A program made the translations under genes and the position numbers. Shown piece after piece: positions 61-63,554 of a stretch of 64,000 nucleotides of DNA (its first letter is position 1; each line of letters opens with the position of its first letter). Source of the DNA: Calcarisporiella thermophila CBS 279.70 (taxonomy: Eukaryota > Fungi > Calcarisporiellomycota); the NCBI RefSeq assembly GCF_041956535.1, contig NW_027192198.1:1049055-1113054 (forward strand). The letters run 5' to 3'. Below the pieces are notes generated by a model. It saw nothing but the letters and a program-made list of their open reading frames with translations. It had not been told where the DNA came from and ran no database searches.

Positions 61-518
61 ATATGTTGATGATCGACTATAATATTTAGTTAAAAATACA
101 TGATATAACAGGTTACCTTACATTCTCATGTCGTTTGATATGAGGAGAGCAAAGGGGTTGAAGGAGAATTACATTTTCTATCGCTGTAATAGATATTTGG
201 GTTTAGCATTCCGCTGAGACCATCAGTTGATTTTTCCTTGGAGGAACTTTTTGCCTTAGAGATCATTTTTCATGCTGGTCGTTTCTAGTAAGCTATTTAG
301 TGGAACTGAAACCGAACCTCATTGTTTTCTGGGAGACCAAGAATTCTTGAAGATATACCGTTTTGATTTCGGAACTCTTCTCGGACGACACAGTAGATGA
401 TAAAAATTCGCTTCTCAAAAATAAATATATACATTATGTATATATATATATATATATATTGAAGCCTTTTAAATTGCAAAGGTGTAAAATGTTATCTTCA
501 AAAATATTAATGATGTTA

Positions 519-590
519 CTCTCCGGCCGGGAATTGAACCCGGGTCGCCCGCGTGACAGGCGGGAATACTAACCACTATACTACCGAAGA
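519..590 (-). tRNA. tRNA-Asp (GTC)
   Basis: Reverse complement TCTTCGG-TAGTATAGTGGTTAGTATT-CCCGC-CTGTCAC-GCGGG-CGACCCGGGTTCAATTCCCGG-CCGGAGA-G folds as a 72-nt cloverleaf with anticodon GTC. Confidence 0.97.
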
Positions 591-673
591 ATTTCAACTA
601 TATCTTTTTGGCAGATAATTAATATTTCTTTAAGAAAACTTTAACTGCGCCACTTCTTTTGAATAAATCTTTG

Positions 674-1014
674 TGCTGTCTTTGGATGGCACATTGGTTA
701 AGAGTCCCGGAACTTAACCATTGTTTGCTGAGTTCGATTCCCGGTGAAGGCACCAGTACTAGAGATGTAGCCGGGACATACTCTAGGAATTGAGTTATAC
801 GCTGCTTCGTTACAACTTCTCTGAAATGCAGTAAAATGTGTCAATGGAATTCTTCCATATATAATTTCAACTTAATCTGTATCTTTCTCGGTACAAGCAA
901 TTCTACTCTACTAGGCTGGTCTGGAGCATTACCTGGGTGATTTTAACGCAGAAGTCTACCCTGCCTTTATTTGTATAGGAGACTTTTCAATAAAGGTCCT
1001 TTGTTAAATAAAAA
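674..1014 (+). mobile_element. tRNA-derived SINE (family A), ~340 bp
   Basis: Pol III A-box (TGGCACATTGG) and B-box (GAGTTCGATTCCC) in a tRNA-like head ending CACCA (~755); AATAAA at 989-994; A-rich tail; 12-bp direct repeat AATAAATCTTTG at 662-673 and 1015-1026; 3' part has homologous copies at 1-60 and 63300-63540. Confidence 0.85.
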
Positions 1015-2220
1015 AATAAATCTTTGCCAGAAATTGGCTATAACCTGCACAGAGAAATACAACTTTTTGATTCATCTTTACCGACTGCCTTCATTAATAC
1101 GCTTTACAATATTTGGACAATTTAAAATAAAATCTGCAGTTCTTAAAAATCAGTAACAACCTTTTCTTAGTAAATCAGGCAGTAAAATAGGGCGACTTCC
1201 TAACCCTATTACCTTTTCTTATCTTGGATTTGATGACTTCTGCTACCCTTCATCTTATATACTACTACAGATTATTTTTTTTTCCTTATTTTTTTTTCGA
1301 AAAAATATGAAGTGTATTCGCACTCTCATAATATCTCACAGGTTTCACTTGACATTCTTGTCTCCCTTGTTTCGTCCCTTTACTTCCATTAAATATCGAA
1401 AAGGAAGCTTTTTAATAAAGACCCTAAACAAAAAAAAACTTAGGTTTAATGAACTAGTTTTTCTATCAATATTACAGCAACTAGCAACCATTATCAAATG
1501 ACTACAAGAATAGGTAGCAAATATCTTCAGAAGAAATCCAAATACAGAGTGCACTAGTAAGTCTGCAACAACCTTCAGGAGTTGACATGGGTCCGATAAA
1601 TATCAAGGATCAAAAAAAATTTGCCACCTGACTGCTATAAATCGCGGGAACTATAAAGTCCAGTTGCTGACCACAAGAAGTCCAATTGGCATTATATCTA
1701 TTAGAAAAACACTAATAATAGCCAAAAATTTCCTCGAACGATAAAAAGTTCCATCTTTAGCTTATTAAAAGAATCTAATGTATCGATCTCTTCGCAAAAT
1801 ATCCAGATCAATGCTTAAGGGATGACGCAAGTTCAAACCATCCTTTTCACATCTCTTTCACATATTATCATTCAATGTGGCAGTCCCTCTTGGGTATGAG
1901 AAAGTATGTTCTTTACCTATTTTGGCAATACAATATTTACTACAGGAATAAGCAAATTTTGAACTTGAATTTACTCTACGATATAATCCACTGCGATATT
2001 TAGAAGAATACATTTTACAGGGTATATAGATTTGTCACAAGATATTTTATTCACTCGTAAGGCAAAAATATTATGATATACATCTTAATGTAAAAATAGT
2101 TAGTATAATAATAATAGTAATAATGATAATAATTAATGACAAATATTTAATAAAGGAAATAATTAAACTACATAAAAGGAGTATAATTACTGAAGGGTCA
2201 TTTTTTCAGTGCCTCTAAAA

Positions 2221-4998
2221 TTATGATGCTCTAGCTTCCAACTCCACCACCGCTGGCTCGGTTATGCCATCTCCAATGATGGCCTCAACCATGGCTTCCT
2301 TTTCTTGCTGCTCAGACTGAGCTCGTGCTGCTGCCAGACACTCCAAGTATTCTTGGTAGCGTACAAGCTCGGCCAGGAGATATTGGCTCTTACGCTCCCA
2401 ATTGCTGGTTGCCTTGAGGAGTTGTGGAGATTTGGGTGGGTAGAGTTGCTCCATCGCTTCACGGTATTCGCTGTGGTTTTCCAGCTCTCGTTCCAAGCCC
2501 TCCACATGCCGATTTAGTGCCTGAATCTGCGATGCTTCATCAAGATTGCTCGAAACCATAGGAGGTGCGGGTGGCTGCCATTCATTGATGGGTCGATCAA
2601 CGACATATCCATTACCAGATTGCTCTGCCTTAAATTCATCCCCATCCTCTTCACCGCCGCTCTTAAGGCACCGAGACCACCCATATTCTATATTGCTTAC
2701 CCCCCCTGAAAGCGGCGGCCGACTCTCACGTGCTGCCTGGTAATTGCATGTACTGACCCACTCTGTCACCTGCTGTGCATTCGGTGCCTGGAAGAGGTAG
2801 ATGCCTCCGTTTGATATCGTCAGCGCAAATACATGTGGCCTAGCTCGCGAGTAACCAGGTGGAGGCAATGTTTTTGCAAGAGTATGCCTTAGGCTGATAC
2901 GCCCGGCAAGCACAGCCCCTGCCATCCACGGGGGATGACGTTCTCCGTTACGGTGTACGGGCGTTACTTTCTTCGCGTCGGTTTGGAACATTCGCAAGGA
3001 TCCACGATCAACTACAACGAAGAATTCTTTCCAATCCCGTTGTCGTGCCTTGTGGTCCTTCTTCTCCAGAAGGTGTTTTCTTAAAAGAACACCCTGCTTC
3101 ATATATGGTACGCAAAGAGGTGTAGCAGAGGGTATGGGGGAATGAAGGGTGGAGGCGTTCGAAGCTCCACTTGTTATGGACATTTGGTCATCAAACTCGA
3201 AGTCCCCTGATTTACCCGCAAAGGTCGAGAGTGAGATGGAGGAGTGAGCGAAGCGGCGGTTGGGACTAAAAGGATTAGAGGGATGGTTGAGAGTATGCAT
3301 GCTTTCACTCTTATGAACCACCTGGTAATGAAGTGAGTCCTTTTTATCATGCAATCGAGGAGAGGCACCATCCCTTGAATCTCTAGTGCTTGGGCGATTT
3401 AGCGTGCTACGACTGCGATTCAGACTGACGGCGCTTGTGAAACCTCCAGGATGCATCGATCCGCCGAGAAGTAGCATTGACTGGCGAGAAGGACGCACAG
3501 GTGGCTCGGAATTACAGCCAGTCGGCTGGAGTATCTGGTTGGTGCGGATAGCTGAGTACATCTCTTTTAGGACCGACTCGATATCTGAGAGTTGATTAGA
3601 CAAGGGAGGAATTATAGTCTTTTTAATACTCTGGGAGCGACGAGGCCTTGAATTAGTTCCAGTTCTTGTAGGCGAATCCCCGTTAACACGTTCATTAGGC
3701 AGATGCATTCGGACTGTACTTAGGGTATTTTTGACAAACTCGCTGCGTGTCATGCGATTGGAAAGTTCAGCGATATGAAGGTCGGTATTCAGCAGGAGAA
3801 GGGAATAAGCAACGGCATGGACAATATCTGGCAAAAGATAATGAAGAGCCAAAATCAAGTATTTGATGTAATATGTTTCAATATGGTTGCACTTACCGGC
3901 ACTTCCAAATATTGTGCTCGAGTTACATTCAAAATAACGTTTTGCAAACGCTTCCAGTATTCTGTCAACTTTTTGCGTTTCTCCCTTTAAATAGAGTCGA
4001 GCGCATAAACTTCGAAGCGCGTCGTCCAGACGCAACTCGGAAAAATTAAAATAGGACATGTAGCAAGAAAGGACAAGGGTATTAAGCTCTTCGCTAAAGC
4101 ATAATACAATTGATGTTAATTGATGAGATCAGCAACCTTGAAAATGCTTGACCCCTTACTTTTTTCCAAGAAATTCTGCGATATCCTCTTTCTTCAAAAA
4201 AGTTTCGTCCTCTTCGTAACAGCGCCGAGCAATTTGGCTCACCTCGTCTTCCTCTGTTTCCCCTTCTTTGCTATCTAAATTGGTCGTTTCTTCTTCTATC
4301 TTCTCGCTCAATACATTTTCCTCTACATTTTCCTCTATATTTTCCTCTGCTTTTCCTTTGCCACTACTACCTCTGGTCTCCTTATCCTCGACCCAAAACG
4401 AAGGAGCGCAACTTCGCCGGGCATTCTCTCTATCAGGGTTGGGTCGCTCCAAGTTTAGTGAGGAAGAAACAGATCGAGAACGGGAGAGCATAGGCGTTCC
4501 TGGTTTTTCGAAAAAAGATGAGGCTGCGCCTTTCTCTGGTTCTGGACTCTTTTCTCCGATGTCTAAGAGCATGGCGGTGCTAAGTGAGTCAGACTGTTGA
4601 GAAGTATCAAACGGGAGCAGCGGCAATTCTGGCTTGTGCAAAATCTGCGTGAGGCGTTTTTCTTGCTTGGACATTTCAACTGCATCTATTCGTGTGTGAA
4701 TGTTTTCTGTCCGATCTGAACCAGGATCCGAGACTGAGGAAAGTGCCCGTAACGGCTCTTGTCGCCTATCTACTCCTCGGCATTCTAAGGGCGGAGTTGG
4801 GAGCTGTAGTGATGGCTCCATAGCAATTCTCCTTGAATTCCAGGATCTTATCGCAGGGGAATCGTTCTCAGTGGACAAACTTGTGGCGCGTATCAATTGT
4901 GTACGGTGCTTTTGTGGTGAGCTTGGCTGTTGCTGACTCTGTAGCTCATCTACTGCTGCCATGAGCCGCAGGCTTCGACGTTTATTTTCCACATCCAT
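2221..4998 (-). CDS. Sec7-domain plus PH-domain Arf guanine-nucleotide exchange factor (Syt1/EFA6-like); further 5' exons probably extend to ~5895
   Basis: Sec7 motifs LYLKGETQKVDRILEAFAKRY and AYSLLLLNTDLH; C-terminal PH domain (KARQRDWKEFFVVV...PHVFAL...WVSTCNY); introns at ~4159-4096 and ~3896-3829; the 5' exons have frame problems and are unresolved. Confidence 0.9.
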
Positions 4999-7619
4999 TT
5001 GAAGTTTTGCATATATGTTAGCATAATCCAGAAGTGTACGTTGTAAATGTTTCTGTTCATCGTCGAGCTCGGAGTCATTTTCGTTATCGATTTGCTTTTC
5101 GAGGGTACCAGAGCGCGACCGTGTAATGCTACTGCGCAGTGGATTCTGGATATGCCGAGGAAGTGGATTGAAAAACGAAGTTGATTTTGGGGTAGAAGGA
5201 GGACAGGTTTCGTCGCCTGAAATAGAATTTTTCGGTTCCTCAGTCCACTGCGTGATAGTCTCGCCATCATTTGTCTAAGTATATATAGAATTTCCAGTTA
5301 GGAATTGCGATTGTCAAGTGTTAAGAGGGATCCTAGAATACCTTTCCGAGTTTTCTGAAAAACATCTTAGTTTTAAACATACGCTTAGCAAAGCCAGATA
5401 GCATAGTCTGAAGCAAGATGTCCGCAATTTCTTTAATGAGAATATTCTATGTAGTAAAGTACACTGGGCTTACCTGTCCACCACCATTCGTGTTCAAGTC
5501 AGAATCTGTATGCTTTTCTTTCATTCTGTATCTCCTTTTAGCTTGTCCTATGTGAAAGAATGCGGATGGAGATGAAGTGCATCTTGAAAGACCGAAAGAA
5601 GACGGGTTGAATTACCTTCGCGCTGGTGAATTTCAGGGACGGATTTGGACCTAATACCTGCTACATCCGCAGGTAGCGGAGGTAGTTCTTTGGCCTTATT
5701 CCTGTCTGATGTCGGGGCGATGGATTGTGGGAGATCACCATTTGAAATGGGAGACATTTCAGGTACAGTAGTGGGGGCACGGATGATCGAAGAGTCTGGA
5801 TGAGACTTGTGCCAGGGTGGCGCACGGCTAGCGTATGGACTGGGTATTGGCTGCTGTAGATGGTGCGGCTGATGTGTGAGGGAGTGCGCGGCCATTTATA
5901 GGTAGGAAAACGTGGAATGCATTAAAGAAAAATGAAGGAAGGAGGAAGGAAGATTCTTGCAAACGAGACTTCAATAGACCTGTTAGGTTAATAAAAAATT
6001 TGGTGCAAGTTTCATTTCTATGAAGTTTGAGACCTAAATTTATTGGGGCGCAGCATTAGTACAACCTTTGAATCTGATTTCGAGAGGACTGATCTTCCAA
6101 GTAATTGTGAGGGAAAGAGAGCGGCCTCTGCCTCGAAGCAATAACATCCCAGCAGGCTATGTTGATCTCTCTGGGGAGCCGTCATAGAGCTCGCTAATGC
6201 TAGTCTTTGGGTATATTTACTTCAACTATAGTGCTGCCTCGGTTATAAATCGATCTCATCTCAACAAGAAATTTGTGCGAGGTCAGTTATAAAAAGAAAT
6301 TAACTTGGATGCCTACAGCGGAGAAATTGCCCAAAACCTTGGCTGAAGTTGAAATTAATTAAATGGCTCCTCCTGGCAGCCGGACGTAAATGCCGGATAA
6401 GTTTGATCTGTGAGCACCTACTCTCAATACAAATCTTAACATGAGTCAAATGCATCCATAGCGTGATATAAACGCAAATCTGCGCAAGTTCAGAACAGCC
6501 TGATTATACGGTGGCCATTTGTATCTCCTAACCGATTCCTAGCACAAGGAAACAAAGGGGAATATTATATGATTGAATAAAAGCACTCAAGCCCATCCGC
6601 GTGATGACGGCCAATTCAGGAGCTGGGTGGCCATCTTACGTGTCGTGATGAGACCCATCTCGTTTCCTGTCTTTTGCAGTCAACAAATACATCTAAATCG
6701 GTGTTATTTGAAAACTTTGTTTACCAGAGCTGGAAGCAAATTGAAGCCACCAGGTCTTGTATTAAGACGCCTGCTGCATAGAGTGGCTATACCTTCACAC
6801 TTTTTCCTCATATAACTATTTATGCCAACTGGAGGGTTCTCCACACATTTCTGGTTTTCCTCCACTAAAGCTCATCGACTATTCTACCCCACCAAAATGG
6901 ATCTCTCTTTTAGTTTGGACATTTAGCATACGTATCGCACAAGACCCGTAGATAGATCTTACCTATTGCTATTATTACCCTATAACTTCTTAGGTTATTA
7001 TGGTTTGTGTTAGAGCGCAGGGCAGATGTGAAGATTCGCCTACCAATAGGATAAAATTCTTTCGAAAAAGCAACAAATCCATCAAACCTTCCCTTATTTT
7101 CACTTAGCATTTGCTCCGATATCTACTTTCTGAAGACTTCAATGAGCAATATCACTAAATACGATCCTTTCCACCAAAGTTTCGCCATGACTAACCCTTC
7201 GGTGCTAATATTCTCATACTAGTGGAGAATGCGAGGATCTCATATTTATAAGTGTGCAGATAAGTGCTTCTAAAAGGTCCGGGCAACATTAAATACGGTC
7301 TGAACGTTCTGTTTATTAGCACAAACACTTTTGATTTTTAAATAAGCCAAGGTGATATATAAAAGTTTTCCGAAATCCCTAATCACGATCTTAACATTTC
7401 GCGCTTTTGTGTGATTTCAGATTATAGAAATATAAATGCCAATTCATAATAATCAATGTAACACTAATTATTTAATGAGGCTACGTGTTAACAAAATCAA
7501 GTGATACCGATTATAAAAACATCAGAGGGCTAAAATCACCTGCAAAATTCTCTTCTGTATTGCGTAGTTCAAAAAAAGTGCTTCATTTATTTTGAATACA
7601 AGATGCAAACAATAATCGA

Positions 7620-8171
7620 TTAGTATTCATCGAAGTTAGTGTCATCACCAAAGACGAGATCGTCGTCGGAGTCTTCCTCCTCAGCCTCGGGGAAGAGACC
7701 CTTGGAGCGGAGGTAGGCAATGGAAGCGGGAATGGCCTCATCACGCATTTTGAGGGTGAATTTACCCTTTTCGGGATCAGCCGCGATCTCACCAGTGGCG
7801 AGATCACCTTCTACTGACAGAAGCTTGCCATCGAAAAGGCCGAGGACGTGTTCCGTCCACTCCTTGATGTTGATTTTATCAGCTTTGTCCTTAGGAACGT
7901 AGCTCACAATAGCCAATTTCTCGTTATTAACGGAGAAGATCATTTTGCCAACTCCAGCAGAGCCACCGCGACGCTCCTCCTCAGTGGGGTCGATTTCGGC
8001 GTTCATGGCCTTCATGGACTCGACCAAAAGTCCGACATCACCTTCGGGCTCATCGACTTTGGTGCAGAAAAACTCCAAACCACCCATCTCAGCGACGCCC
8101 AGGATTTCGATACCGCGCTTACCTCCCTCCTTGACGACCTTCTTGAGCTTTTTCTCGTCGAATCCGGACAT
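7620..8171 (-). CDS. Intronless 183-aa acidic conserved hypothetical protein
   Basis: Clean ORF with codon usage like a highly expressed gene; motifs KEGGKRGIEI-G-AEMGGLEFF and EERRGGSAGVGKM; acidic tail. Confidence 0.85.
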   Translation of the reverse strand: MSGFDEKKLKKVVKEGGKRGIEILGVAEMGGLEFFCTKVDEPEGDVGLLVESMKAMNAEIDPTEEERRGGSAGVGKMIFSVNNEKLAIVSYVPKDKADKINIKEWTEHVLGLFDGKLLSVEGDLATGEIAADPEKGKFTLKMRDEAIPASIAYLRSKGLFPEAEEEDSDDDLVFGDDTNFDEY

Positions 8172-9328
8172 GGTGATTATTTCGTTACTTGTAAAAAAAA
8201 AATAAAAAACGAATGAAATAGAAAAATTTTTTCTCTAGTGATTTGCACTTTTATACCATAAACAACACGAGTTTACGCCAGCCAATGACTGCGTGTCAAA
8301 AAAGTAGCTAAATAAATGCTGATGTCACCAAGACTGGGAAAATAGGATTGCGAATCAAAGATCATCTTTGGAGACTATCCCCATGGCTTGATATTTGATT
8401 GGGCGGGATGAATAAAATCTCCAATTGTACCAAAGTGTAGGAGCAGACATGCAGCTTTTCTCGATACCTACGCAAGATTGGTGAAAATGCCCGTAAATAA
8501 TTTATTCTATTCTCCATCGCATTTCTATCGCGTTGAATTTTTAGCATTCATTCAAGTTGAGAGAGCAAACAGCACAATTTAAATTTAAAATCTTCCCGCT
8601 TAAAGATAATTATTAATGCTCTTTATGCTGCTGAGATCAATTTATTTGTAATGAACTTTATTTATATCGAAGGGGCATATTATGCAAAGTGTCAATCCCA
8701 CTTACCATTACATCTCACTATTATCATGCATACAATAAACTAAGATTGTCTTAATATTCTCTCCTACTCAATGCGATACAAGTCCATTTAAATCTATTTT
8801 ATAAAGACAATGAAGATCCCGCTGCAGTTCATTTTATAAGGATGGCAAGCATACATATGGAAACTGTCCCGGCCTCGATTGTTCGAATCAGATTTGATCG
8901 AGTAGAGTCGTTCGATGCATATTGGCACGCCCTCCAACCCTATCAAAGTAGCCCACATTCGGAGAAAGCTCTTTGAGGGAAATGAGAGTGGCCCCAAAAC
9001 ATCACGTTGTAAACTCAAAAATTTCAACAATGCTGTTGCATGGCTTGAGTGGACTACCCTGTATTGATTCAATATATACGGGGTGAGAAATTACTCTCGT
9101 AATTTTGGGTTGACACTTAAGAATGCTTGAAGAGTTAAATATGGCGGGTTTATTTTATGAATAGGACGAAAGATAAACTGATCAAGATAACATTCAAACA
9201 TCATTATTAATATCACGACATCGAAAAGAAGAGGTCTTAATAAAAGTTAACAAAGAAATGAAAGAAGCAAAAATGGTCGACATTAAATCTAATTAGAAAA
9301 TGAAGGGAATGGAGCATCTCATAACGAA

Positions 9329-11774
9329 CTAATACTTGGGAGTGGATGACCAGCCCAGAGAGTTCTCTTGCAACATTGGAGGGGAGATCTCATTGGGAGG
9401 ATACCGTTCTGACCCCAGGATACGGTCGCGTTTTTCTTGCCGACGCCGCTTGTACACATTAATGAAAAAGGCAACAATACCCAACCAGACTATGGTGGTT
9501 GCGGCAACTGCTAGTCCTATCACAACTCCCTTATTAGAGTCAGAACTGGGCTCCGGATTCGATTCTCCAGAGGCAATGATGTTCATTCCTAACAAACACA
9601 ATATTAAATGTCAGCACAGGGATTCAGGATGGCCGACGCCTAAATTATGATTGATGGTACCTTCATTGTTGGTGAGCGCAAGCGGGAAAGATCGATCGAT
9701 GAACTGGCTGATCTTCCCGTTTGGATTCGTGTATAGCTTGCTCTGCCCATCACTAAGGACCTGCTTAATTGGCTCGATGGATTCACTTGGCACAGCCATT
9801 ACCACCAACACACCGCTAGTTCCATCCTCGTTTCGTCGCACCTGGCGAGCTTTTCTAGTTGCATCGCTCATGCTCAGCACAACCATGCGGGACGGAGGAA
9901 CACCAACAGCAGAGCCAAGCTCATTGGGCAAGAAGTTGACAATCTGCGCAGCAAGGATTGGATCGTGGCATACCTGGGCGTACTGAATCCCCATCAGTTT
10001 GAGCATTACTGTGGTGCTTCCGGGGGGCGGCGTTGCCTTTGTGTCGGGAACAATCACTTCAGGAAGATTAGAGGCTGGCGAAGCACGAGATGTAGAAGTA
10101 GTGGAGGTAGTTGCGGCATCGGCTGTTTCTTCCATATTAGTGCGTGTCTTTGTAACCGTGTTGGTTGTGGTTTCTTCGAGGCGGAGTGTAGGCGGAAGCC
10201 AATCTATATCACTGTAGTCTGTAGTGGGTGTAGTGGTGGCGGTAGTTGATGTAAAGGCTGTGGATGTGGTTGGGGTTGCAGAAGCGGTCTCGCTATCTGA
10301 TGGTTTGGGAGAGGATGGTGTTTGGCTGGTTAAGCTAGACCCTGTGGCTTCAGTCGCACTGGCAATTGAGGTTGCGATGGTGGCCGAGGGCGAGGCACTG
10401 TTTGGCAACTGCGAGGTTGCAGTGGCCATGCTAGCCAAATTGGACTGAGTCGCAGTGGCTTTTTCTACGGATACGCCCTCCAATGTGCTCGTTGTTTCTG
10501 ATGAAGAACCCCCCAAGAGTGGGTCAAGCAAGGGTTTCAATGGCAAAGACATGGAGAGTAAAGGTTGGTCTTTCTTTGCTGTGGCACTCGATGGTTTCTC
10601 TTCAGATTGAAGAGGGGTAGTCATCGGTGTTCCTATCGCTGATTCATGCATGGGGCGAGAGTGTCGTGAAGGCGTGGGAGTGGCTTGTTCCATAGAGCGA
10701 GGAGGTTGGGACGCAACCGACCTGTGTTCCTCGTTAGACATGCCCGACCCTACGACAGAAGTTGGCTTGTTCGCCTTTGCTTCAGCTGAATTTGACGAGG
10801 TCGGAACATAACTGCTAGAAGATGGAGCGACACTGGAGGAGGTTGAGGGGGGAGGAGTGGGCTCATCACCGCCGCTGCTTGTAGACATAGTTGGAGAGGC
10901 TTCTTGCGATGGGGTCTCAGTTGGAGTTGCGCTCGAACTCTCTGCTGAGGTACGCTCTGGAGATGCCTCCATGCTGGAGGAGGTAGTCTCGGTTGCTTTG
11001 TCCTTCTCCATTACTTTCTCTTTTTCCATGGTCTTTTCATCTGTGTCTGTTTGCTCCGACTTGAGCTTATCCGTTTTAGTACTCTCCTCCTCCATCTTGG
11101 TGTCCTCTTCTTCCGAATCATCCGTGGCGGCCACTTTCTTCTTCGTCGCCTCAGTACTCGAGCCCTTGGCAGTAGTCTCTTTTTCAGAGTCCATGGTCTT
11201 TGCTTTTGGCTTTGCCTTGGTCTTGACTGCTTCTTCTGTCTCCTTTGGCTTCATCGCCTTGGCGGTTGACTTGGTGGCTTTCGCGGTTCCTTCTGTAGTG
11301 GCCTTCTTTGGCTTTGCCTTTGGCTTGGTTACAGATTGCCGGCCGGTGTTTGCCTTGTTGTTTTGGGAGGAAGAGGGTTGATTGTTGTTGTTGTTGCCTC
11401 TCTGATTCTGAGGTTGGTTCTGGGGTTGGCTCTGGGACTGTACCTGCTGGCCACCTCCGTACTGATTTGAAAACTGAGACCCCTGTGATCCCGTCCCCAT
11501 TTGTGCAGGATCAGGACGATTGATGCCCTATAGTAGACAAGCGGGTTGTTAGTTCGCCCTATAGTCCCAAACAGTATGGTCATTCCCTTCTCTCTCTCCC
11601 CTTACTTACCAGGACATTACTCTCTAGATTCTGTATGGCATTAAGGAACAGCCGAGATAACTGTCGCTTCTTATAAGAATGCCTCAGCTCTCCGTCTACG
11701 TGAATGGTCGCCATACTCTGGACGGATAAAACCATCATTAGGCTGACGGCGAGGTAGGGAGCAAGTCGCACCAT
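9329..11774 (-). CDS. MSB2: Msb2/Hkr1-like signalling mucin (3 exons)
   Basis: Signal peptide, long Ser/Thr-rich region, HMH-like domain (LAAQIVNFLP), single TM helix, cytoplasmic tail ending ISPPMLQENSLGW. Confidence 0.8.
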
Positions 11775-13525
11775 GATGGCTATGCTTGAATTAAGGGCCC
11801 ACTATTTGAAAGTGTTAGCGCTAACAGGAATAGGCAGGGAGGACGGAGACACTACAGAAATGAGGGGAATGGATAGGCAGTTGAAGATGGAGCTGTAAAA
11901 GACTCAAACAAGGAGAAATAAAGGAAGGGAATGGGAAGGGGGTGGTAATAGAACGAATGACACTTGGATATTAGAGGTGCTACAGTTGGTTCAAAGACTC
12001 ACTCTCACTAAAGATAGAAATGAACACACTTGAATGAGTTCAACGGGGATGTAGAACGACCATTCAAGATGGAATGAGATTCAGAGATGGTCGTCTCTTT
12101 CCAACTTCTTCTTTGAAAGAGGAAAAGGGGAGAGGGAGGGGATGGATATCGTCTTATTTCGTATCGCACAGAAGGGAAAGCATTATTAGGCATATGTAAC
12201 GCTAGCTCATAACGTGCGGTGCACGGATATTGCTTATGTTTCAATCTTATCCCTATTTAAGACAATAGGGGATGCGAACGTGTGCGACGTTGGCCTCAAG
12301 GGACGGAAGTGAGCACAGGCCATTTAATTCTATGAAATTCATTCCCAAAACACCGATTGCCGGAGTACAAAACGTCTTCTCTAAATTAAAAGCAACAGTA
12401 TAAAAATAAATGATTGTGCTGACAGTTCGATCTCAAAGCGCCAATAATGGTGCGCTAAGCTCCCTTAAAGTCTCAGGCAACTCTTGTAAAGCAAATTAAG
12501 AAGCATCGCAATAAAGAGAATACACCTAATTATAAGATAACCGGGAATAATTCGGTCTTTAAAGGCCGAAAATTACTATGAAAATAAGAGAACTGAAACA
12601 AAATAATTCTATTAAAAAATAAACTAGCTATTAAAAAAGCAAAGGGAACGCTCAATCGCAGAATGCTGAGCGTTTTTTTTTTCTCACAATCATATTGAGC
12701 TTCAACTAAAGAAACACTAGTAAAATCAATTAAACCCGACTTGACTACAGATGAGAAGATCCTAGATAAACCTCTGGTATAAAACCAGTTTTATAATATA
12801 ACCAAGCATCAACTAATGCTACACAAGGGTGCGAGAGGCGACTTGTGCCTTTTTCTTAATATGAATTCAGAGCAATGAGGCTAGCACACTGCCGCAATCG
12901 CTGTAGCAGAGATAGTGATGCTTAAATTTATTTGACATTTTTATATGTCAGAAGAGCAATCAAATCGTTTTATAAACGCCCGTTGTAGTGGAGTCACAAT
13001 CGCGGTTAATCCCTTTTCTATATCGGTGGTCAGCATCGCCCTTTCTCTCAAGTGAAAAAGAAAAAGCGTGTTCCTTGAGGAGAGATTTTGAAAAATTCGT
13101 ATTTTCTCAACCTATTATTTTTATTGAAATATAAAAGAGACTGGCATTGCTCGGTATCCTATTACTAATATATATACCACGGCGACGCGATTATAGTAAA
13201 ACAGAGCCTGGGCTTGTATGCACTGCAGTTTGTAATACGAGCGCATGATGCATTTTCGTTCTCTCTCTGTATCACATTCTACAAAAGTGGATAGAAAATT
13301 GATAGGAAGAAACCCCATTTTTTACGATTCTAGGTAATACAACTAATAGATGAGTGCAATGGTCTTCATACAGTAATATAAATGGAAATTACGCAAATGG
13401 AGAATAGGGCTGTGTTTGTTTAAGGATAAAATAATAAGATTTTCTTTAGAGATATCCATTTTTCTTGTTCTCAGTAGTAGTGTGGATTGGGCTGAGAATC
13501 ATTTTAGCAAAAAACAAAATTGAAT

Positions 13526-13598
13526 CGCCCAACGTGGGGGTCGAACCCACAACCTTGAGATTAAGAGTCTCACGCTCTACCGATTGAGCTAGCCGGGC
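13526..13598 (-). tRNA. tRNA-Lys (CTT)
   Basis: Reverse complement GCCCGGCTAGCTCAATCGGTAGAGCGTGAGACTCTTAATCTCAAGGTTGTGGGTTCGACCCCCACGTTGGGCG is a canonical 73-nt cloverleaf. Confidence 0.98.
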
Positions 13599-13675
13599 TT
13601 CCGCTGAAAGAGAGTTCAAAAAGCCAAATTTGAATAACATAGAATCGTTTTGGATTTTTGCATTTTGCCGCCCTT

Positions 13676-14012
13676 GGTGGGGGAGGGTTAGTGTAGTGGA
13701 CTATTCCTGGGATGCCGATGAGAACGGCGTGGGTTCGAATCCCACTTCCCCCACCAGCACTTACTCTTAGTTTGTGACTGCTGTCCACTTGATCAGAAGC
13801 TGAGTCTTGATTATTGAAAAGACCGCCCTTACGATAAGTACAAAAGATTACATCGGTTTCACGTACATGCTATACACGACAACTGCGATATACGCATATC
13901 GATTGAACGTCTATCGATCAAGGACCTATATCTCGTTAAGTCCATTGACATTAACTTCATGTAATATATGGAAATTAAATAAAAGTTTCCATTGATTGAT
14001 CAAAAAAAAAAA
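13676..14012 (+). mobile_element. tRNA-derived SINE (family B), ~337 bp
   Basis: Head GGTGGGGGAG...TAGTGTAGTGG (A-box)...GTGGGTTCGAATCCCAC (B-box/T-arm)...TTCCCCCACCA; AATAAA at 13978-13983; A11 tail at 14002-14012; direct repeat TTTGCCGCCCTT(GGTG) at 13664 and 14013. Confidence 0.88.
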
Positions 14013-14024
14013 TTTGCCGCCCTT

Positions 14025-14894
14025 GGTGCCTCGATTCTGGCCCGAGGTTGGATCTACACCAAAAGATTGGGAGAAGGTTTGGACCTCCGTCCACAAGCGA
14101 CCCACACTCCCTAAAACACCGTGCGCTACGCTGGTGGATCCTTGTAGAACGAGTAATCGCTAACTCTACATTTCCTGGTCACGATCCAAAGTGTACCCGT
14201 TGCAACGCTTCAAGGGTCACAATTCGTCATACCTTTTTCGAATGTCCGGAACCTACACCAGTGTGGTAGTGGGCGGAGAAGTGTATCATCACCATCACAG
14301 GTCCCCCAGAATTCTCAGGTGCTGATTGCTCGCAACCTTATATTAGGAGACCTATCTGGATCCTCACGAACAGCAAGACACGTGGCTCAAATCACCTTCG
14401 ATTCGGTACTGTGGCAAATCCATCGGGATCGTATCGCCTTTCATTTTGAAAACACTCGAGCCTTATCCGAAACCATTATCAATCGGGCCAAGATGGATAT
14501 TGAGGAGGCAATAGGAGCCGAACTAACAAGAGCCCGAATAAAGCGACAAATTGAACAGTTCCGAAGCAGGTGGTATATACTGGCCGCAGTGAAAGAAGGA
14601 GCTAATAGAGCGGCTCTAGAACTGGACTGACGCAGTAGCCCCTACTACTAGCCCTTCTCTTTCCTCATATCTCTCTCTCCATATCACCTATCAAGTCTTC
14701 CCCTAATACCCACAGTTAGCTGAGTTTTATTTCTCATCTACCCATCTGAGGAGAAAATTCGTTATGACCAATTTACCCCGAATTGCAATACCGCATTAAT
14801 ATCTAGCTCTCATTTTATTACTTTTAATAATGTAACGATTGTACTTTAGAGTCTTCTTAAACAATAAAGACTCATTTTTGATAAAAAAAAAAAA
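14025..14894 (+). mobile_element. 5'-truncated L1/Tx1-type non-LTR retrotransposon (ORF2 C-terminal zf-RVT region, 3' UTR, poly(A))
   Basis: Disrupted frame reads WEKVWTSVHKRPTLPK/HRALRWWIL...CTRCNASRVTIRHTFFECP...VW (CxxC-H-C zinc finger); stop at 14630; AATAAA at 14863; A12 tail; 16-bp TSD GC(A/T)TTTTGCCGCCCTT at 13660-13675 and 14895-14910. Confidence 0.9.
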
Positions 14895-15299
14895 GCTTTT
14901 TGCCGCCCTTTTCGTAATAGTTTAAATAAACCACTGGATGCAAGTGCTTGGTCCTTTGAGGAAAAAAGCCGCCCTATTCGTCCAAGCCAAGGATTGTATT
15001 TATCACAGATAACCATGAACATGAAGATATTGCATTCAACTGTATCTCTTATCCGATTTACACATTGCCATCAAGGCTCAATAGCTACAGGCACAGAGGA
15101 AAGAATTTAAACTAAGGTTCGAGCAGAAATAGAAAAAGAACTCACCAATCCAGATCGATGAGAGCCGAGAGGTAGGCTTCTATTTCGAGGGAGTAAATAA
15201 CACTTGGTTTGAACTTTACAAGCACGGGTCTCACCAGGCTATATCCCTTGATTTCTTGTACTATAAAATCTTGCTTGGAAGCCCCCTTCACTTATATAA

Positions 15300-16177
15300 T
15301 ATATTTTAAAATAAACCATAGTGTGCAAGTTTTCGCGTCCTAAAAGGAAAAAAAAAAGGCACTCGTTTCGTCCAGAAATGGCCAACTCTTCCAAGGCATT
15401 ACGCGCTACATTGACGAATCCATAATGCACGTGTGATCACCAACCTGACCTACCCTGATTGAGCCCCGAAGTGTGTACCCTCTGCAGCGCTTCGAAAGAC
15501 ACAACCCGTTACATTTATTCGAATGTCCTGAAGTAACGCCAATGTGCCAGTGGGCACAGAGATATATCAACATCATTGTATGTCCCCCAGAACACTCTGG
15601 TATCTACTTCTAAGTTTCTAACACTTGGCGTCTTACCCGAAGCCCCAAGTATGCTAAACCATGTGGTTCAAATTACTTTCGATTCAGCATTGTGGCAGAT
15701 ACACCTGGGCCGCATTGTTTACCACTCGAGTATCATCCGAGACTCTCACCAACCGTGTCAAATTTGGTATCGAGGAACCAAATTGGTAAAAAGCGCGAAA
15801 AGTGCGAGGGCTCGAGCTGTTTCGGGGCAGGTTGTGCAAACAAGATGTGTAGATAGAAGGAGTAGATAGTGCGGCCCCGGTGTTGAAATGGCGTAGTGGT
15901 CACTTCTTATTATTTTCTACCTTTCATAACTCCATGTCTTTTGTTTTCTATCTACTTGACCAATCTTCTAATTACTACTGTCAAATTATTTCTTTTGTTT
16001 CCATTTTTCATTAGTTATTACTTGAGAAATACAAATTGTTATTTCCAATGTTTTATCTTGAATAGATTTGGCAAATTAACTTTTTCTTTTCTTTCTATTT
16101 TCCCATCATCCTGTAGCCACTGTATTTTATTAGGAATCTCTCTAGTAATAAAGACGCACAATAGCAAAAAAAAAAAA
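15300..16177 (+). mobile_element. Older, degenerate paralogous LINE 3' fragment (5' boundary uncertain)
   Basis: 15470-15720 aligns with the first LINE (CTLCSAS...TTCGAATGTCC; HVVQITFDSALWQIH vs HVAQITFDSVLWQIH); ends AATAAAGAC then A12 at 16166-16177. Confidence 0.8.
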
Positions 16178-17703
16178 GCTATCGGTTGCACTTTATAGAT
16201 AAGTTTCCCTCTATTGTCTTCCTTCTTTACTAAGATCATCTTTTTTTGTTTTTCTTTCCTTTTGCTTACTACTACCATGGTCATTAGGTATTGAAAAGAG
16301 GACTTTAAGAAAATCCTCTCTTTGTTGTAAAAAATAAAGCCGCCCATTATGGATCTCTCATTCAAAAGGAACAAACAAATATTCTATCCTATTTTAATAA
16401 AAAAAAAGAAAGCTTTCGACCGCCACTGCTCGAGCGTCATTTGAGAATCTCATCAACCTTGTCAAATCTGATATTAAGACGGCCATATAAGGTTATCCTT
16501 TTCTTCTGTTTATTTTTTTTTTTATCAGGAGCCGATATGATTTGAGTTCATATACTTATGAATTAAAAACTTGGCTGAAAGTTTACGTTGGCTGAGATGA
16601 ATCTCTTTGTCACCTTAGCTATCCCAAAGCTGGATCAAATGTGAGCAAATTTGATCTTAAGCGCTACGTACTTCTCTAGGTCTATAGAATACTTTACAAT
16701 AAAATACTTGCATTTAAATAACAAGCACTTTATTTTCATTAGCCATTCAATAATTTTATATCCTGTTTTATTTCAAAAAGAAAAATAAAAATCGTGCCCT
16801 GCAACATAGGGCTGCAATAAAACAGAAAATCAGATACAAAAGTAACTGTACGATACGTGCCAAGCATCCCACTCACCTAGGAAAAAAAAGCCTCCACTCA
16901 ATGAAATATCCCAAGGCCTTCTTGGCCATTAGTCCGTTCTTGGCGTACCCTAAGTTCCATGGCGCTATCCACTCGATATAATGCACAAAGCTTTGTGGGA
17001 CTGTTTTCTTGCAACCGATAGCCTTCAAGCTAGCGGGAATTTATGTTGACGGTTCAAAGGATCCACTCCGGCTGCACCAGTTCATACTACGAGGAAAGAA
17101 GGCTTAACTCTGTTACATACTAGGAAATTTTATGCTACTGTTTCTTTTCATGTTTCTTTTAATAGCCTGCAGATGGCGGCTTCGTTTCTTTGTTGATAGC
17201 CTTCTGTCTCCGCTACACATCACTGTTTTCGCTTCACCTTGATTGACATTGGTATTGGCCTCTAATTATAGTTTGATAGCGAAATGGCTTCATGGGGGAG
17301 CATCGGTTCAATTATCCGAGGCAAGCACCAACTCATTGTTTCCACCTAATTATCGACGGGGCGCCATTTTTTGGGTGACACTAGGCCACCGATCAGGGTA
17401 GGCCAGGGCTAGCCAGGGCAGCAATCCTTTCACTAGCTCCACATTATAATTTATTGCATTAAAGGCGGATGAATAGCCCGCAGGAGATAGAGCACAGTGA
17501 CTTGGGGGAGGGGGGAGCCCTTCCATCTCCATATAGTGAGTATACCATAGAACGAGGGCAGACAAATTTGAATGGAATTGGCGAGGGACAGACGAGAATC
17601 GGTTGCCACCGCTTCTGACGTCACACCATAGGACAATGATATGGAAATTTTAGCCCGACCCCCACGCAACACTCCTCCTTCGTAAGATTCTCGACCTCGA
17701 GCC

Positions 17704-25628: not shown

Positions 25629-25700
25629 GGGCTCAACTGGGAATTGAACCCAGGACCTCTCCCACCCTAAGGGAGAATTATACCACTAAACCATTGAGCC
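25629..25700 (-). tRNA. tRNA-Pro (AGG)
   Basis: Reverse complement GGCTCAATGGTTTAGTGGTATAATTCTCCCTTAGGGTGGGAGAGGTCCTGGGTTCAATTCCCAGTTGAGCCC, 72-nt cloverleaf. Confidence 0.97.
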
Positions 25701-27446
25701 ACCCTATTCGGTGAAATTTAGATTTGAGAAATCTTTTTATAGCGGAATTTTTCTGTATAATTTTCACAGATGGATTTTTTTAAAGAGACATTCTCAGGAA
25801 GGTTAGTGTTCATAGTTTAGGCCTTTTTTGAAATATACAAGGTTCGATAACCTTTGTAAGAGACTTAATACATTTTATCAGAGAATCCTGGATACACTAC
25901 GTTTATATTTCTAGGGATAATATCAACGCATTGGATGCCACGAGGAGACGCAAGGCAAAGACCGACAAAAGCATGATGGTATTATATCCAAAGGTATATT
26001 TCCGTTTGATCTACATATAAATCAATGGGCCATGAGTAGAGGTCCAAAGGAAAAAAAATGAAGAAGAAAGCTTAAAAATAAAAATGGGTCAAGAGCCGAC
26101 AAATTCAGATCATCGATAGTCAGGAGGTGACCTTTGATTTCGAAGACGTAGGGTATACCTAGAGCGACCTAATCTGTTTTGAGTCGTTTCAACCTTTATA
26201 CTTCGATTACTTATATTTAATTTCTCTAAGTTGACCCCACTGTTATAATAAATTTTAAATTAACAGAGCACGTAAGTACTTGCCTCCAGAAAGGAAAAAA
26301 AAACCATTAAAATAAAAGTGATTTTTTATTTTACTTTCCCGTTTTCCTACAGCTGCTTTACTTTCAGCCTCATATACATATATATATATCTATTTACTAT
26401 GTTTTTTTTTTTACACCATCACATTTCTCTTTAATCCATCTATGAATAGCCGCATTGAAAGTGACTTTATCATCCTATCCTAATGTACCTTCAATTTTTC
26501 GACACCTATCCTACCTTTTTCAACCTAGCCCTCATACCATCAGGAGTAGATATCTCCCAGCGTGAGCGGGGGCCTAACTGTCTGCCATTGAACTGGCGTT
26601 CAGTGGCCCATTTCTTTGATTACCCAGCCTCTAGAGGCAAGGGAGATTGCTTGTCATTTGTATTTAATTTTTACTTAAAAATGGAATAATGAAGCGACCG
26701 ATTTCTCTCCGTCCATGGCCCAAGCCCCCTCCCAGTTCCCCAATGAATGCAGCCTTCTGCTGAATTTCAATGCATCCCAGTAGGAACGCGCATGTAACCA
26801 GATCCAAGTGCGTCCATATATTCTATTCAAGGCTTGAGTTGATGAAGTTAAATGAAAGTAAACCTTCTCACTATGACTATATATAGCAGTGTCGGGATGG
26901 TCAGATATCAAGATCGCCAGGGACGCTTCCTCAGAAATCCGATGTCTCCTTCTCATCAAGTAACGAAAATGGACGCTTGCCTCGGGGCAATACCGAATTC
27001 CAAATTCCAGAAGGAGAGAGAAGCAGGATCTTTTGGGAACAGAATATACCATTTGCTTATTTACCAGCATTGATTGCCTTGCTAAAAAGGCAGTCATCGC
27101 CCCTTTGTTGAAAAGAACAGAATGAGGGTCAAGCCTGTCCAGAATCCGCCGATGGGAGTGGCCGACTCAACCAGTAGGTCGGGTCTATTATGGGCTCAGG
27201 CCGACAGGGGGCAGGCTGACTCTCAGTAGGTTTTTCGTTAATGCGTCCATCCAAGTTGACAGCTGCGTTGTAGAAATTGTATATATATTCTTTTTAACTT
27301 ACAGAGGAGGAAAAGCAAAATGTAAATAAATTGTATAGCACCATGGATTAGTAGTAAACAGAAGAGGGGAAGATTTTTTCATATATGGAAAATGCATCAA
27401 CCCAAGGGCAAAGAGTCGGGCTCGTGGCTCTAGGAACTCTGGTCCA

Positions 27447-63300: not shown

Positions 63301-63554
63301 TCCTATCCTGTAAAAAAGGTAGGGTAGCTTCTACGACAAAATCACCCAGGTAATGCTCCTGGCCTACCTTGAAGAATCTGAAAGTTAGAAGAAGACTACG
63401 CCAATCATTTTTGTTTTTGTTTTTGTTTTTTTTTGTTAGGAAGGCCTTTATTAAAAAGTATCCTTTTTCATTCTTCGATTATACCATCCCTCTTTTTTTT
63501 TTTAACAAAGGATCTTTATTGAAAAGTATCCTATCCTAGATTATACCATCCCGC
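63301..63554 (-). mobile_element. Cluster of SINE-A-related 3' fragments, including a 46-bp insertion with TSD
   Basis: 63301-63370 matches the reverse complement of ~915-980; poly(T)+TTTATT tails at ~63408-63463 and 63493-63538; direct repeat GATTATACCATCCC(T/G)C at 63477-63492 and 63539-63554. Confidence 0.75.

What the first reader, a model, noticed from the sequence alone, without database searches (positions are those of the whole stretch)
519..16420. Candidate position-specific LINE/SINE system inserting 62-72 bp upstream of tRNA genes (fungal analogue of Dictyostelium TRE5)
Seen: three TSD-flanked, poly(A)-tailed retroelements lie upstream of two different tRNA genes, always with the 5' end facing the tRNA 5' end. 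The tRNA-proximal TSDs start 72 bp (SINE-A, tRNA-Asp), 66 bp (SINE-B, tRNA-Lys) and 62 bp (LINE, tRNA-Lys) from the first tRNA base. The target sequences are unrelated (AATAAATCTTTG vs GCATTTTGCCGCCCTT), so distance and orientation are conserved but sequence is not. Established: Dictyostelium TRE5 non-LTR elements insert about 50 bp upstream of tRNA genes in this orientation via TFIIIB contact; yeast Ty1/Ty3 target tRNA genes but are LTR elements. Inference: an L1/Tx1-type fungal LINE is tethered to the Pol III machinery and also mobilises at least two SINE families into these safe-haven sites. I do not recall this being described in fungi but cannot search the literature.
Basis: partly seen in the sequence, partly recalled or inferred. 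Interest (0 to 1): 0.93.

Follow-up and report, generated by a model that had tools for sequence, protein, structure and literature searches.

The report
tRNA-gene-targeted LINEs and SINEs in a fungus
In the early-diverging thermophilic fungus Calcarisporiella thermophila, several families of L1-type LINEs and tRNA-derived SINEs insert at a fixed distance (first nick about 68 bp, element start about 80 bp) upstream of tRNA genes. They are always head-to-head with the tRNA, a targeting habit so far described for non-LTR elements only in social amoebae.

Summary
The genome is Calcarisporiella thermophila (28 Mb).

- **SINE-B:** of 45 copies that keep their 5' end, 24 lie 74-98 bp (median 84) from the 5' end of a tRNA gene. 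All 24 are head-to-head, next to 19 different tRNA species.
- **SINE-A-like:** 7 of 19 copies lie at 73-89 bp, all head-to-head.
- **Chance:** 31 of 52 assessable copies sit in this window, binomial P about 3e-78.
- **Target-site duplications:** 12-18 bp, unrelated in sequence, starting 59-79 nt from the tRNA.
- **LINE copies:** broken off at many different internal points, yet all start 68-85 bp from a tRNA.
- **tRNA-centred sample:** of 55 tRNA genes, 24 carry a readable element at 68-95 bp. In 8 more a withheld stretch starts at 72-96 bp.
- **5S rRNA:** one 5S gene carries an insertion with a 21-bp duplication starting 56 nt upstream.
- **The LINE:** L1-type (APE, RT, zf-RVT). Its ORF1 has no relatives outside this species.

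Best reading: target-primed reverse transcription tethered to the Pol III initiation complex, measured from the start-site side. The tether itself is inferred, not shown. No description was found in the papers searched. Four first-reader notes of this scan on this genome record the same pattern; none was followed up. New variant of a known kind.

The parts
518..591 (-). tRNA-Asp(GTC), target gene 1
   Evidence: ARAGORN
662..673 (+). Target-site duplication of SINE-A, left copy (AATAAATCTTTG). It starts 70 nt beyond the tRNA 5' base. The right copy is at 1014-1025.
674..1013 (+). SINE-A: tRNA-like head with A and B boxes ending in CCA, a body, a 3' hairpin carrying AAUAAA, and an A-rich tail. 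It lies head-to-head with tRNA-Asp.
   Evidence: Genome copies are 70-88% identical.
13526..13598 (-). tRNA-Lys(CTT), target gene 2
13660..13679 (+). Overlapping left target-site duplications: LINE fragment (13660-13675) and SINE-B (13664-13679)
13680..14012 (+). SINE-B: tRNA-like head (A box, B box, CCA), a body, a 3' hairpin with AAUAAA in the loop, and poly(A). It is the youngest insertion at this site.
   Evidence: 39 distinct full-length copies, mean pairwise identity 95.3%.
14013..14028 (+). Right copy of the SINE-B duplication (TTTGCCGCCCTTGGTG). Its last 4 nt are the first 4 nt of the LINE fragment.
14025..14894 (+). 5'-truncated L1-type LINE: the end of ORF2 including the zf-RVT region, the 3' UTR, a hairpin and poly(A). 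It is 76% identical to positions 4204-5090 of the long copy in L062.
14895..14910 (+). Right copy of the LINE duplication (GCTTTTTGCCGCCCTT, 15 of 16 identical to 13660-13675)
14911..16420 (+). Older part of the stack. It holds a roughly 50-bp tail fragment (to 14967), a roughly 375-bp 3' fragment of a third LINE family (about 14984-15357), a second LINE 3' fragment (about 15375-16177) and two short decayed poly(A) fragments (to about 16339 and about 16411). Each is followed by a decayed copy of the target.
25629..25700 (-). tRNA-Pro(AGG) with no recognisable young element at 60-100 bp upstream. It shows that not every tRNA gene is occupied.

Best explanation
Calcarisporiella thermophila carries at least three families of L1-type (APE-type) non-LTR retrotransposons and several tRNA-derived SINE families that ride on them. 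All integrate by target-primed reverse transcription at a fixed place upstream of Pol III genes.

Geometry. The priming (bottom-strand) nick falls about 68 nt (range 59-79) upstream of the mature tRNA 5' end. The second nick falls 12-18 nt further out. The element therefore starts about 80-84 bp from the tRNA, always with its 5' end facing the tRNA.

Shown here: the distance, the orientation, the lack of any shared target sequence, the many different tRNA species hit, and repeated hits that build stacks with the youngest element next to the tRNA.

Inferred: the element's ribonucleoprotein is held by a protein of the Pol III pre-initiation complex. This is most likely TFIIIB, which TFIIIC places at a fixed distance from the start site. 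The endonuclease then cuts about two helical turns upstream of it.

Also inferred: the SINEs are copied in trans because they carry the LINEs' 3' hairpin and poly(A) tail.
For: 1. Element-centred census. For SINE-B, 24 of 45 copies have a tRNA 74-98 bp upstream (median 84), 24 of 24 head-to-head, with 19 tRNA species. For SINE-A-like copies, 7 of 19 lie at 73-89 bp, 7 of 7 head-to-head. Overall 31 of 52 assessable copies, P about 3e-78.
2. Duplications are 12-18 bp (most often 16), unrelated in sequence, and start 59-79 nt from the tRNA.
3. tRNA-centred sample. 24 of 55 tRNA genes have a readable repeat starting at 68-95 bp.
4. LINE copies broken at element positions 1, 962, 1771, 4204, 4477, 4612 and 4812 all start 68-85 bp from a tRNA. 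The junction is fixed on the genome side and variable on the element side, as target-primed reverse transcription predicts.
5. The same LTR-like flank sits 5 bp further from the tRNA in L108 than in L094. SINE-B entered it 5 bp earlier, so its 5' end is at position 84 in both. The ruler reads the tRNA, not the sequence.
6. The distance scatters less when measured from the tRNA 5' end (SD 4.8) than from the 3' end (SD 7.3). Long-arm and intron-bearing tRNAs show a similar distance to the rest, a mean of 86 against 82.5 nt from the 5' end.
7. A 5S rRNA gene has poly(A) fragment(s) with a 21-bp duplication starting 56 nt upstream of its start. Its sister copy has the same 77-bp flank uninterrupted. 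If the tRNA leader is about 10 nt (assumed), 56 nt is about the tRNA distance minus that leader.
8. The LINE is L1-type: Exo_endo_phos, RVT_1 and zf-RVT domains, and its N-terminal 586 aa match human L1 ORF2p residues 8-572 at E 7e-53.
9. LINE and SINE tails share a hairpin with AAUAAA in or beside the loop. The stems differ in sequence between families.
Against: No direct evidence for any protein contact. The ORF1-TBP complex prediction gave no answer.

Only one 5S locus supports general Pol III targeting, and the single U6 gene is empty.

14 SINE-B and 7 SINE-A-like copies have no tRNA within 200 bp. Those examined lie in stacks or next to other repeats, but not all were resolved.

Many flanks, and the RT core, are withheld as N. 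Some counts are therefore lower bounds, and the element's clade is unresolved.

No reads were available to show empty alleles or expression. The genome searches score only the best candidates, so this is a large sample, not a full census.
Confidence: 0.8

Rival explanations
1. Targeting works through local chromatin or DNA structure rather than a direct contact with a Pol III factor. An example would be the edge of the nucleosome-free region, or a positioned nucleosome, upstream of active Pol III genes.
For: Only the distance and orientation are shown. No contact was demonstrated. From knowledge, not tested here: yeast Ty1 reads nucleosomes upstream of tRNA genes.
Against: The window is narrow (SD about 4-5 bp) and orientation is 31 of 31. 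The distance is unchanged when the flank is foreign LTR-like or LINE sequence. These fit a fixed, asymmetric protein ruler better than a nucleosome edge.
Confidence: 0.15
2. The tether is not TFIIIB but TFIIIC or a Pol III subunit (as AC40 is for yeast Ty1), or it is ORF2p rather than ORF1p that makes the contact.
For: Nothing here tells the Pol III factors apart. ORF1 is an orphan protein with no recognisable interaction domain.
Against: The distance follows the 5' (start-site) side of the tRNA, not the B-box side. 5S genes use TFIIIA, yet one is hit at the matching distance. Both point to a factor placed relative to the start site, which fits TFIIIB or Pol III better than the B-box arm of TFIIIC.
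Confidence: 0.25
3. The endonuclease recognises a DNA sequence that happens to lie upstream of tRNA genes.
For: A short motif such as TCGAGAG or CTCGGGA recurs in several duplications.
Against: Most duplications share nothing. The same site is used whether the DNA is native, LTR-like or the 5' end of an earlier LINE. Position shifts with the tRNA, not with the sequence.
Confidence: 0.02
4. Insertion is random. Only copies in harmless places next to tRNA genes survive selection, or tRNA-plus-SINE units were spread by segmental duplication.
For: The genome is compact. Some tRNA flanks are shared between loci.
Against: Selection cannot give a window about 25 bp wide with one orientation. Nineteen tRNA species with unrelated flanks and separate duplications mean independent events. 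The shared flanks are separate LTR-like insertions.
Confidence: 0.02

Closest known systems
Dictyostelium TRE5 elements (TRE5-A/B/C), L1-group non-LTR retrotransposons
   Same: Integration upstream of many different tRNA genes with the element's 5' end facing the tRNA, and no dependence on target sequence. The offset at 5S genes is about 10 bp shorter than at tRNA genes (review PMC5911963; here). Both have two ORFs, an APE endonuclease and an A-rich tail.
   Different: The distance is about 68 nt to the first nick and about 80-84 bp to the element, against 40-54 bp for TRE5. The host is a fungus, not an amoebozoan. tRNA-derived SINE partners are present here. The longest copies read have almost no 5' UTR. 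ORF1 is a small CCHC protein with no relatives outside the species. Descent from the TRE lineage could not be tested.
NLTR-B of Polysphondylium pallidum (TRE5-like integration, unrelated to the TREs)
   Same: An L1-group element that gained upstream tRNA targeting independently (PMC5006619; PMC5911963).
   Different: Different host kingdom. No SINE partners are reported for it in the passages read.
Yeast Ty3 and Ty1, Dictyostelium DGLT-A (LTR retrotransposons at Pol III genes)
   Same: They use Pol III genes as safe landing sites through contacts with TFIIIB or Pol III. The same fungus also has LTR-like elements 10-17 bp upstream of tRNAs, the Ty3/DGLT-A position.
   Different: They integrate with an integrase and give 4-5 bp duplications. 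The elements here use target-primed reverse transcription and give 12-18 bp duplications and poly(A) tails.
Sequence-specific non-LTR elements that insert into tRNA or other small-RNA genes (NeSL-1_TV, LIN15_SM, Keno of the Tx1 clade)
   Same: Non-LTR elements tied to multicopy RNA genes (PMC4640811).
   Different: Those recognise a fixed sequence inside the gene and interrupt it. Here the gene stays intact and the target sequence is free.

Membership tests
L1-group (APE-type) non-LTR retrotransposon | N-terminal apurinic-like endonuclease followed by reverse transcriptase in one ORF2 | tested here: met
   Exo_endo_phos at residues 6-229 and the start of RVT_1 at 529-584. Residues 3-580 are collinear with human L1 ORF2p 8-572, E 7e-53. 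RVT_1 hit in a 1372-aa open frame at this copy. The RT core itself reads N in the fetched DNA.
L1-group (APE-type) non-LTR retrotransposon | C-terminal cysteine-rich (zf-RVT) domain, poly(A) tail, variable 5' truncation, target-site duplications of about 7-20 bp | tested here: met
   zf-RVT. Poly(A) and 12-18 bp duplications. Truncation points at 962 to 4812.
Tx1 clade of the L1 group | Placement inside the Tx1 clade in an RT phylogeny | not testable with these tools
   The RT core is withheld as N in all fetched copies. The nearest database proteins are only about 30% identical, mostly unnamed; the named ones are from a turtle, fishes and a frog.
Tx1 clade of the L1 group | Insertion into one fixed target sequence | tested here: not met
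   Duplications are unrelated in sequence.
TRE5 (Dictyostelium tRNA-gene-targeted retroelements, 5' type) | Integration upstream of tRNA genes, 5' end of the element towards the tRNA, independent of target sequence | tested here: met
   31 of 31 head-to-head, with 19 tRNA species for SINE-B and 6 for SINE-A-like.
TRE5 (Dictyostelium tRNA-gene-targeted retroelements, 5' type) | Integration about 40-54 bp upstream of the mature tRNA 5' end | tested here: not met
   Duplications start 59-79 nt upstream (mean about 68). Elements start at 73-98 bp.
TRE5 (Dictyostelium tRNA-gene-targeted retroelements, 5' type) | Common descent with the TRE clade | not testable with these tools
   No TRE sequence was at hand and the RT is withheld. 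ORF1 has no relative outside this species among 1.84 billion representatives.
TRE5 (Dictyostelium tRNA-gene-targeted retroelements, 5' type) | ORF1 protein binds TFIIIB subunits | tested here: inconclusive
   Complex prediction of TBP core with the C-terminal 170 aa of ORF1: score 0.02, verdict 'no answer'.
tRNA-derived SINE (SINE2 type) | tRNA-like 5' head with A and B boxes, unrelated body, LINE-like 3' end, target-site duplication | tested here: met
   Heads end in CCA and are flagged as tRNA-like by ARAGORN and Rfam. The 3' hairpin and tail are shared with LINE families. Duplications. Pol III transcription was not tested.

The most novel reading that the evidence does not exclude
This is an independent invention of Pol III-gene targeting by an L1-type element in fungi, mediated by a species-restricted ORF1 adaptor that measures about 58 bp from the Pol III start site.

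The longest LINE copies read begin 0-16 nt before the ORF1 start codon. The elements may therefore have no promoter of their own. They may depend on the TBP/TFIIIB-bound tRNA upstream region, about 80 bp away and divergent, for their own transcription. Targeting would then serve expression as well as safety.
Probability: 0.25. Interest if true: 0.85.

Novelty: new variant of a known kind. Interest (0 to 1): 0.78.

Why it matters
Position-specific integration of non-LTR retrotransposons next to tRNA genes has so far been described only in social amoebae. A second, independent case in a fungus makes the convergence argument much stronger. It has a different ruler length, several LINE families, tRNA-derived SINE passengers and Ty3-like LTR elements at the same genes.

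It also gives a second system in which to ask how a target-primed reverse transcription machine is aimed by host proteins. That question bears on current efforts to turn LINE-like and R2-like elements into tools for safe-site gene insertion.

The host is a thermophile, so its proteins may suit biochemistry and structural work.

The finding also matters for annotating early-diverging fungal genomes. Here tRNA flanks are dense, ordered stacks of retroelements that record insertion history.

Tried and rejected
- **Sequencing runs:** none was listed for window 12800-15600. Empty alleles and expression could not be checked, and read laying was not used.
- **Complex prediction:** C. thermophila TBP core (P0241:55-234) with the C-terminal 170 aa of ORF1 scored 0.02, verdict 'no answer'. 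This is no evidence either way. The ORF1 piece later proved to lack about 155 N-terminal residues.
- **RT phylogeny:** not possible, because the RT core reads N in every fetched copy. I did not try to get round this.
- **Nearest ORF2 relatives:** about 30% identity, mostly unnamed; the named ones are from a turtle, fishes and a frog. The two contigs checked carry no tRNA, so nothing is learnt about targeting elsewhere.
- **ORF1 domains:** no Pfam family.
- **Consensus fold of the 3' tails:** failed because the aligner misplaced the stems. Single folds were used instead, and their z-scores are modest (-0.8 to -2.7).
- **TBP by joining exons:** not attempted, because the gene is split and joining is barred. 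The annotated protein was used instead.
- **U6 and a third 5S locus:** no insertion found. A fourth, weak 5S-like hit abuts a SINE-B head and then a withheld stretch, so it was uninformative.
- **SINE copies without a nearby tRNA:** Rfam at a permissive threshold found no hidden Pol III gene upstream of seven of them.


Full report
**What is in the window**

ARAGORN finds tRNA-Asp(GTC) at 518-591(-), tRNA-Lys(CTT) at 13526-13598(-) and tRNA-Pro(AGG) at 25629-25700(-).

Upstream of tRNA-Asp lies a 340-bp element on the + strand at 674-1013. It has a tRNA-like head with A and B boxes ending in CCA, and an A-rich tail. Its perfect 12-bp duplication AATAAATCTTTG sits at 662-673 and 1014-1025.

Upstream of tRNA-Lys lie SINE-B (13680-14012) and an 870-bp 5'-truncated LINE (14025-14894), both on the + strand with poly(A) tails.

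One detail differs.
- SINE-B's duplication is the 16-mer TTTGCCGCCCTTGGTG (13664-13679 and 14013-14028).
- Its last four bases are the first four bases of the LINE fragment.
- The LINE therefore inserted first (duplication at 13660-13675 and 14895-14910, 15 of 16 identical). SINE-B came later, at nearly the same distance from the tRNA and partly into LINE sequence.

Between 14911 and 16420 at least five older poly(A) fragments follow. They include a 3' fragment of a third LINE family and a second LINE 3' end. Each is followed by a progressively decayed copy of the same target. The site is a stack with the youngest element next to the tRNA.

**Which organism**

A gamma-glutamyltranspeptidase ORF in the window is 99% identical to a Calcarisporiella thermophila protein. 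That protein's contig length (1,236,294) equals that of the window's contig C8. The ORF1 and TBP proteins found later carry the same species' locus tags.

C. thermophila belongs to the Calcarisporiellomycota, an early-diverging fungal phylum. The genome paper does not discuss transposable elements.

**Genome-wide test, starting from the elements**

Searches of the 28.2-Mb assembly gave 62, 50 and 49 matches for SINE-A, SINE-B and the LINE fragment. Only the best candidates are scored, so these are lower bounds. Sixty loci with 1.5-kb flanks were fetched.

Results after removing duplicate places and allowing for intron-bearing tRNAs:

| Family | Copies with 5' end | tRNA within reach | Distance to tRNA 5' end | Orientation | tRNA species |
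|---|---|---|---|---|---|
| SINE-B | 45 | 24 | 74-98 bp (median 84) | 24 of 24 head-to-head | 19 |
| SINE-A-like | 19 | 7 | 73-89 bp (median 81) | 7 of 7 head-to-head | 6 |

- Of the SINE-B copies, 7 cannot be judged (withheld flank or contig end) and 14 have no tRNA within 200 bp.
- Allowing 1500 tRNA-like loci (the rough first-look count was 1459), 31 of 52 assessable copies in a 41-bp oriented window gives P about 3e-78.
- Duplications are 12-18 bp, most often 16, and unrelated in sequence. They start 59-79 nt (mean about 68) from the tRNA 5' base.
- Examined copies without a nearby tRNA lie behind younger elements in stacks or next to other repeats. A permissive Rfam scan found no hidden Pol III gene there.

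**Genome-wide test, starting from the tRNAs**

I fetched 500 bp upstream of 60 high-scoring tRNA genes. Fifty-two of these could be oriented, and the three window tRNAs were added.
- In 24 of these 55, a readable multicopy element starts 68-95 bp upstream, always in the head-to-head sense. These are SINE-A, SINE-B, further tRNA-like SINE heads and 5'-truncated LINEs of several families.
- In 8 more, a stretch withheld as N starts at 72-96 bp. I cannot read those.
- The rest, including tRNA-Pro in the window, have no young element there.

**The LINE**

The long copy in L062 (C3, minus strand) runs about 5.09 kb. It extends from a 17-bp duplication (TGCTGACCCCGTCGAAA), whose tRNA-proximal copy starts 60 nt upstream of tRNA-Gln, to a poly(A) tail.

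ORF2:
- It has an N-terminal Exo_endo_phos domain, the start of RVT_1 and a C-terminal zf-RVT.
- Its first 586 residues align collinearly with human LINE-1 ORF2p residues 8-572 at E 7e-53.
- The genome search reports a 1372-aa open frame around the RT match at this place.
- The RT core reads N in every fetched copy, so the clade (L1 proper, Tx1, TRE) could not be settled.
- The nearest database proteins are only about 30% identical and mostly unnamed; the named ones are from a turtle, fishes and a frog. Two of their contigs carry no tRNA.

ORF1:
- It carries one CCHC knuckle and a basic tail.
- An exhaustive search of 1.84 billion representatives found only three C. thermophila proteins (one identical and two about 40% identical, from other LINE families), one short partial match that was not looked up, and a CCHC-only hit.
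- Other copies show that L062 lacks about 155 N-terminal ORF1 codons, so the full element is about 5.55 kb.
- In the two longest copies read, the element begins 0-16 nt before the ORF1 ATG. In one it is preceded by a run of about 15 G.

**Signs of target-primed reverse transcription with a ruler**

- LINE copies broken at element positions 1, 962, 1771, 4204, 4477, 4612 and 4812 all begin 68-85 bp from a tRNA.
- Two tRNAs carry the same LTR-like flank, shifted by 5 bp relative to the gene. SINE-B entered it 5 bp apart in the opposite sense, so its 5' end lies at position 84 in both.
- The distance scatters less from the tRNA 5' end (SD 4.8) than from the 3' end (SD 7.3). tRNAs that are 10 nt longer (Leu, Ser, intron-bearing Ala and Asp) show a similar distance to the rest, a mean of 86 against 82.5 nt from the 5' end.
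- In a tandem pair of 5S genes, one copy carries poly(A) tail fragment(s) with a 21-bp duplication starting 56 nt upstream. The other has the same 77-bp flank uninterrupted.
- A 5S transcript starts at its first base. tRNA transcription starts roughly 10 nt before the mature end (established knowledge, not measured here). Both distances then come to about 56-58 nt from the Pol III start site.
- The same 10-bp offset between tRNA and 5S targets is reported for TRE5-A (PMC5911963).
- This points to a factor placed relative to the start site, most simply TFIIIB. That step is inference. The only direct test available gave no answer.

**LINE-SINE partnership**

The SINE and LINE 3' ends share an arrangement: a 7-9 bp hairpin with AAUAAA in or next to the loop, about 10 nt, then poly(A). 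The stems differ in sequence between families. SINE-B's tail is closest to a second LINE family.

SINEs and LINEs also share duplication length, position and orientation. The 39 distinct full-length SINE-B copies average 95.3% pairwise identity, up to 99.4%, and most have perfect duplications. The family is fairly young. Mobilisation in trans is inferred, not shown.

**Comparison with what is known**

The 2016 survey of tRNA targeting and the 2018 review list non-LTR elements with this habit only in dictyostelids: TRE5, TRE3, NLTR-A and NLTR-B.
- Fungal entries there are LTR elements.
- Papers on fungal SINEs and LINEs do not report tRNA targeting.
- Searches on Tx1, Mucoromycota and Calcarisporiella gave nothing closer.
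- The library is limited to open papers, so an earlier description cannot be excluded.

The system works like TRE5 but fails the TRE5 distance criterion. It differs in its SINE partners, its near-absent 5' UTR and its orphan ORF1. I file it as a new variant of a known kind.

First-reader notes s1-588234, s1-600636, s1-600638 and s1-600649 record the same pattern elsewhere in this genome and at this locus. None had been followed up.

**Limits**

- Genome searches score only the best candidates.
- Many flanks are withheld.
- There are no reads, no expression data and no relatives.

Noticed in passing
L076 (C23:556704-557276), L098 (C9:714281-714854); also L090, L094, L104, L108, L099, L115-L117, L100, L103, L109, L073, L081, L112, L123, L133: Several families of LTR-like elements about 250-270 bp long lie 10-17 bp upstream of tRNA 5' ends, always in the same orientation within a family. 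They have TG...CA ends, roughly 10-bp terminal inverted repeats and 4-5 bp duplications, and they occur next to different tRNA species. This is the Ty3/DGLT-A position. Later SINE and LINE insertions at the fixed distance split them. They are probably solo LTRs of tRNA-targeted LTR retrotransposons, so this fungus mirrors Dictyostelium in having both classes at tRNA genes.
   Followed up: partly
L127 30-556 (C31:280129-280655): This is a tandem pair of 5S rRNA genes. The upstream flank of one carries two tandem 75-bp poly(A) tail fragments with a 21-bp duplication (CCGAGAAATCTAAAACCGAAG) starting 56 nt from the gene. The other has the same flank uninterrupted.
   Followed up: partly
L073, L079, L085, L087, L100, L111, L117, L118 (tRNA upstream regions): Stretches withheld as N begin 72-96 bp upstream of eight tRNA genes, the same place where readable LINEs and SINEs begin. 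In L107 the N run begins 16 bp upstream, the LTR position. I could not read them.
   Followed up: no
L091 (C24:364006-364578) and L133 (C51:24200-25800): The longest LINE copies start 0-16 nt before the ORF1 ATG. In L091 the junction carries a run of about 15 G. The near-absent 5' UTR raises the question of where the promoter is.
   Followed up: partly
genome list (for example C8:936352 to 1122674, C29:5704 to 150948, C10:204460 to 214457): tRNA genes are strongly clustered, with many identical copies. Sixteen equal-scoring (66.4-bit) hits were listed on C8, C29 and C96, and those fetched are tRNA-Lys(CTT). They often occur in divergent pairs a few hundred bp to a few kb apart, with retroelement stacks between them.
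   Followed up: no
window 26040-26060 and 26238-26303: About 340-600 bp upstream of the 'empty' tRNA-Pro there are A-tailed pieces in the head-to-head sense that resemble the tail of the third LINE family (75% over 68 nt). They may be remains of very old insertions.
   Followed up: partly
window 63312-63534 (-): A remnant of the 3' third of a SINE-A-like element lies on the minus strand near the window's end. Any target gene would lie beyond it, near or past the window's end.
   Followed up: no
L093 about 97-180 and L121 from 78 (tRNA upstream regions): A further tRNA-like SINE head (B box GGTTCGATTCC), distinct from SINE-A and SINE-B, sits at the same position upstream of tRNA-Arg and tRNA-Lys. 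A short SINE-A-like family shares only the first 139 nt of SINE-A.
   Followed up: no
L131 349-840 (C5:1038448-1038939) and C2:34236-34896: There are two TBP-like genes in the genome. The C5 copy has a short in-frame intron inside its open frame.
   Followed up: no
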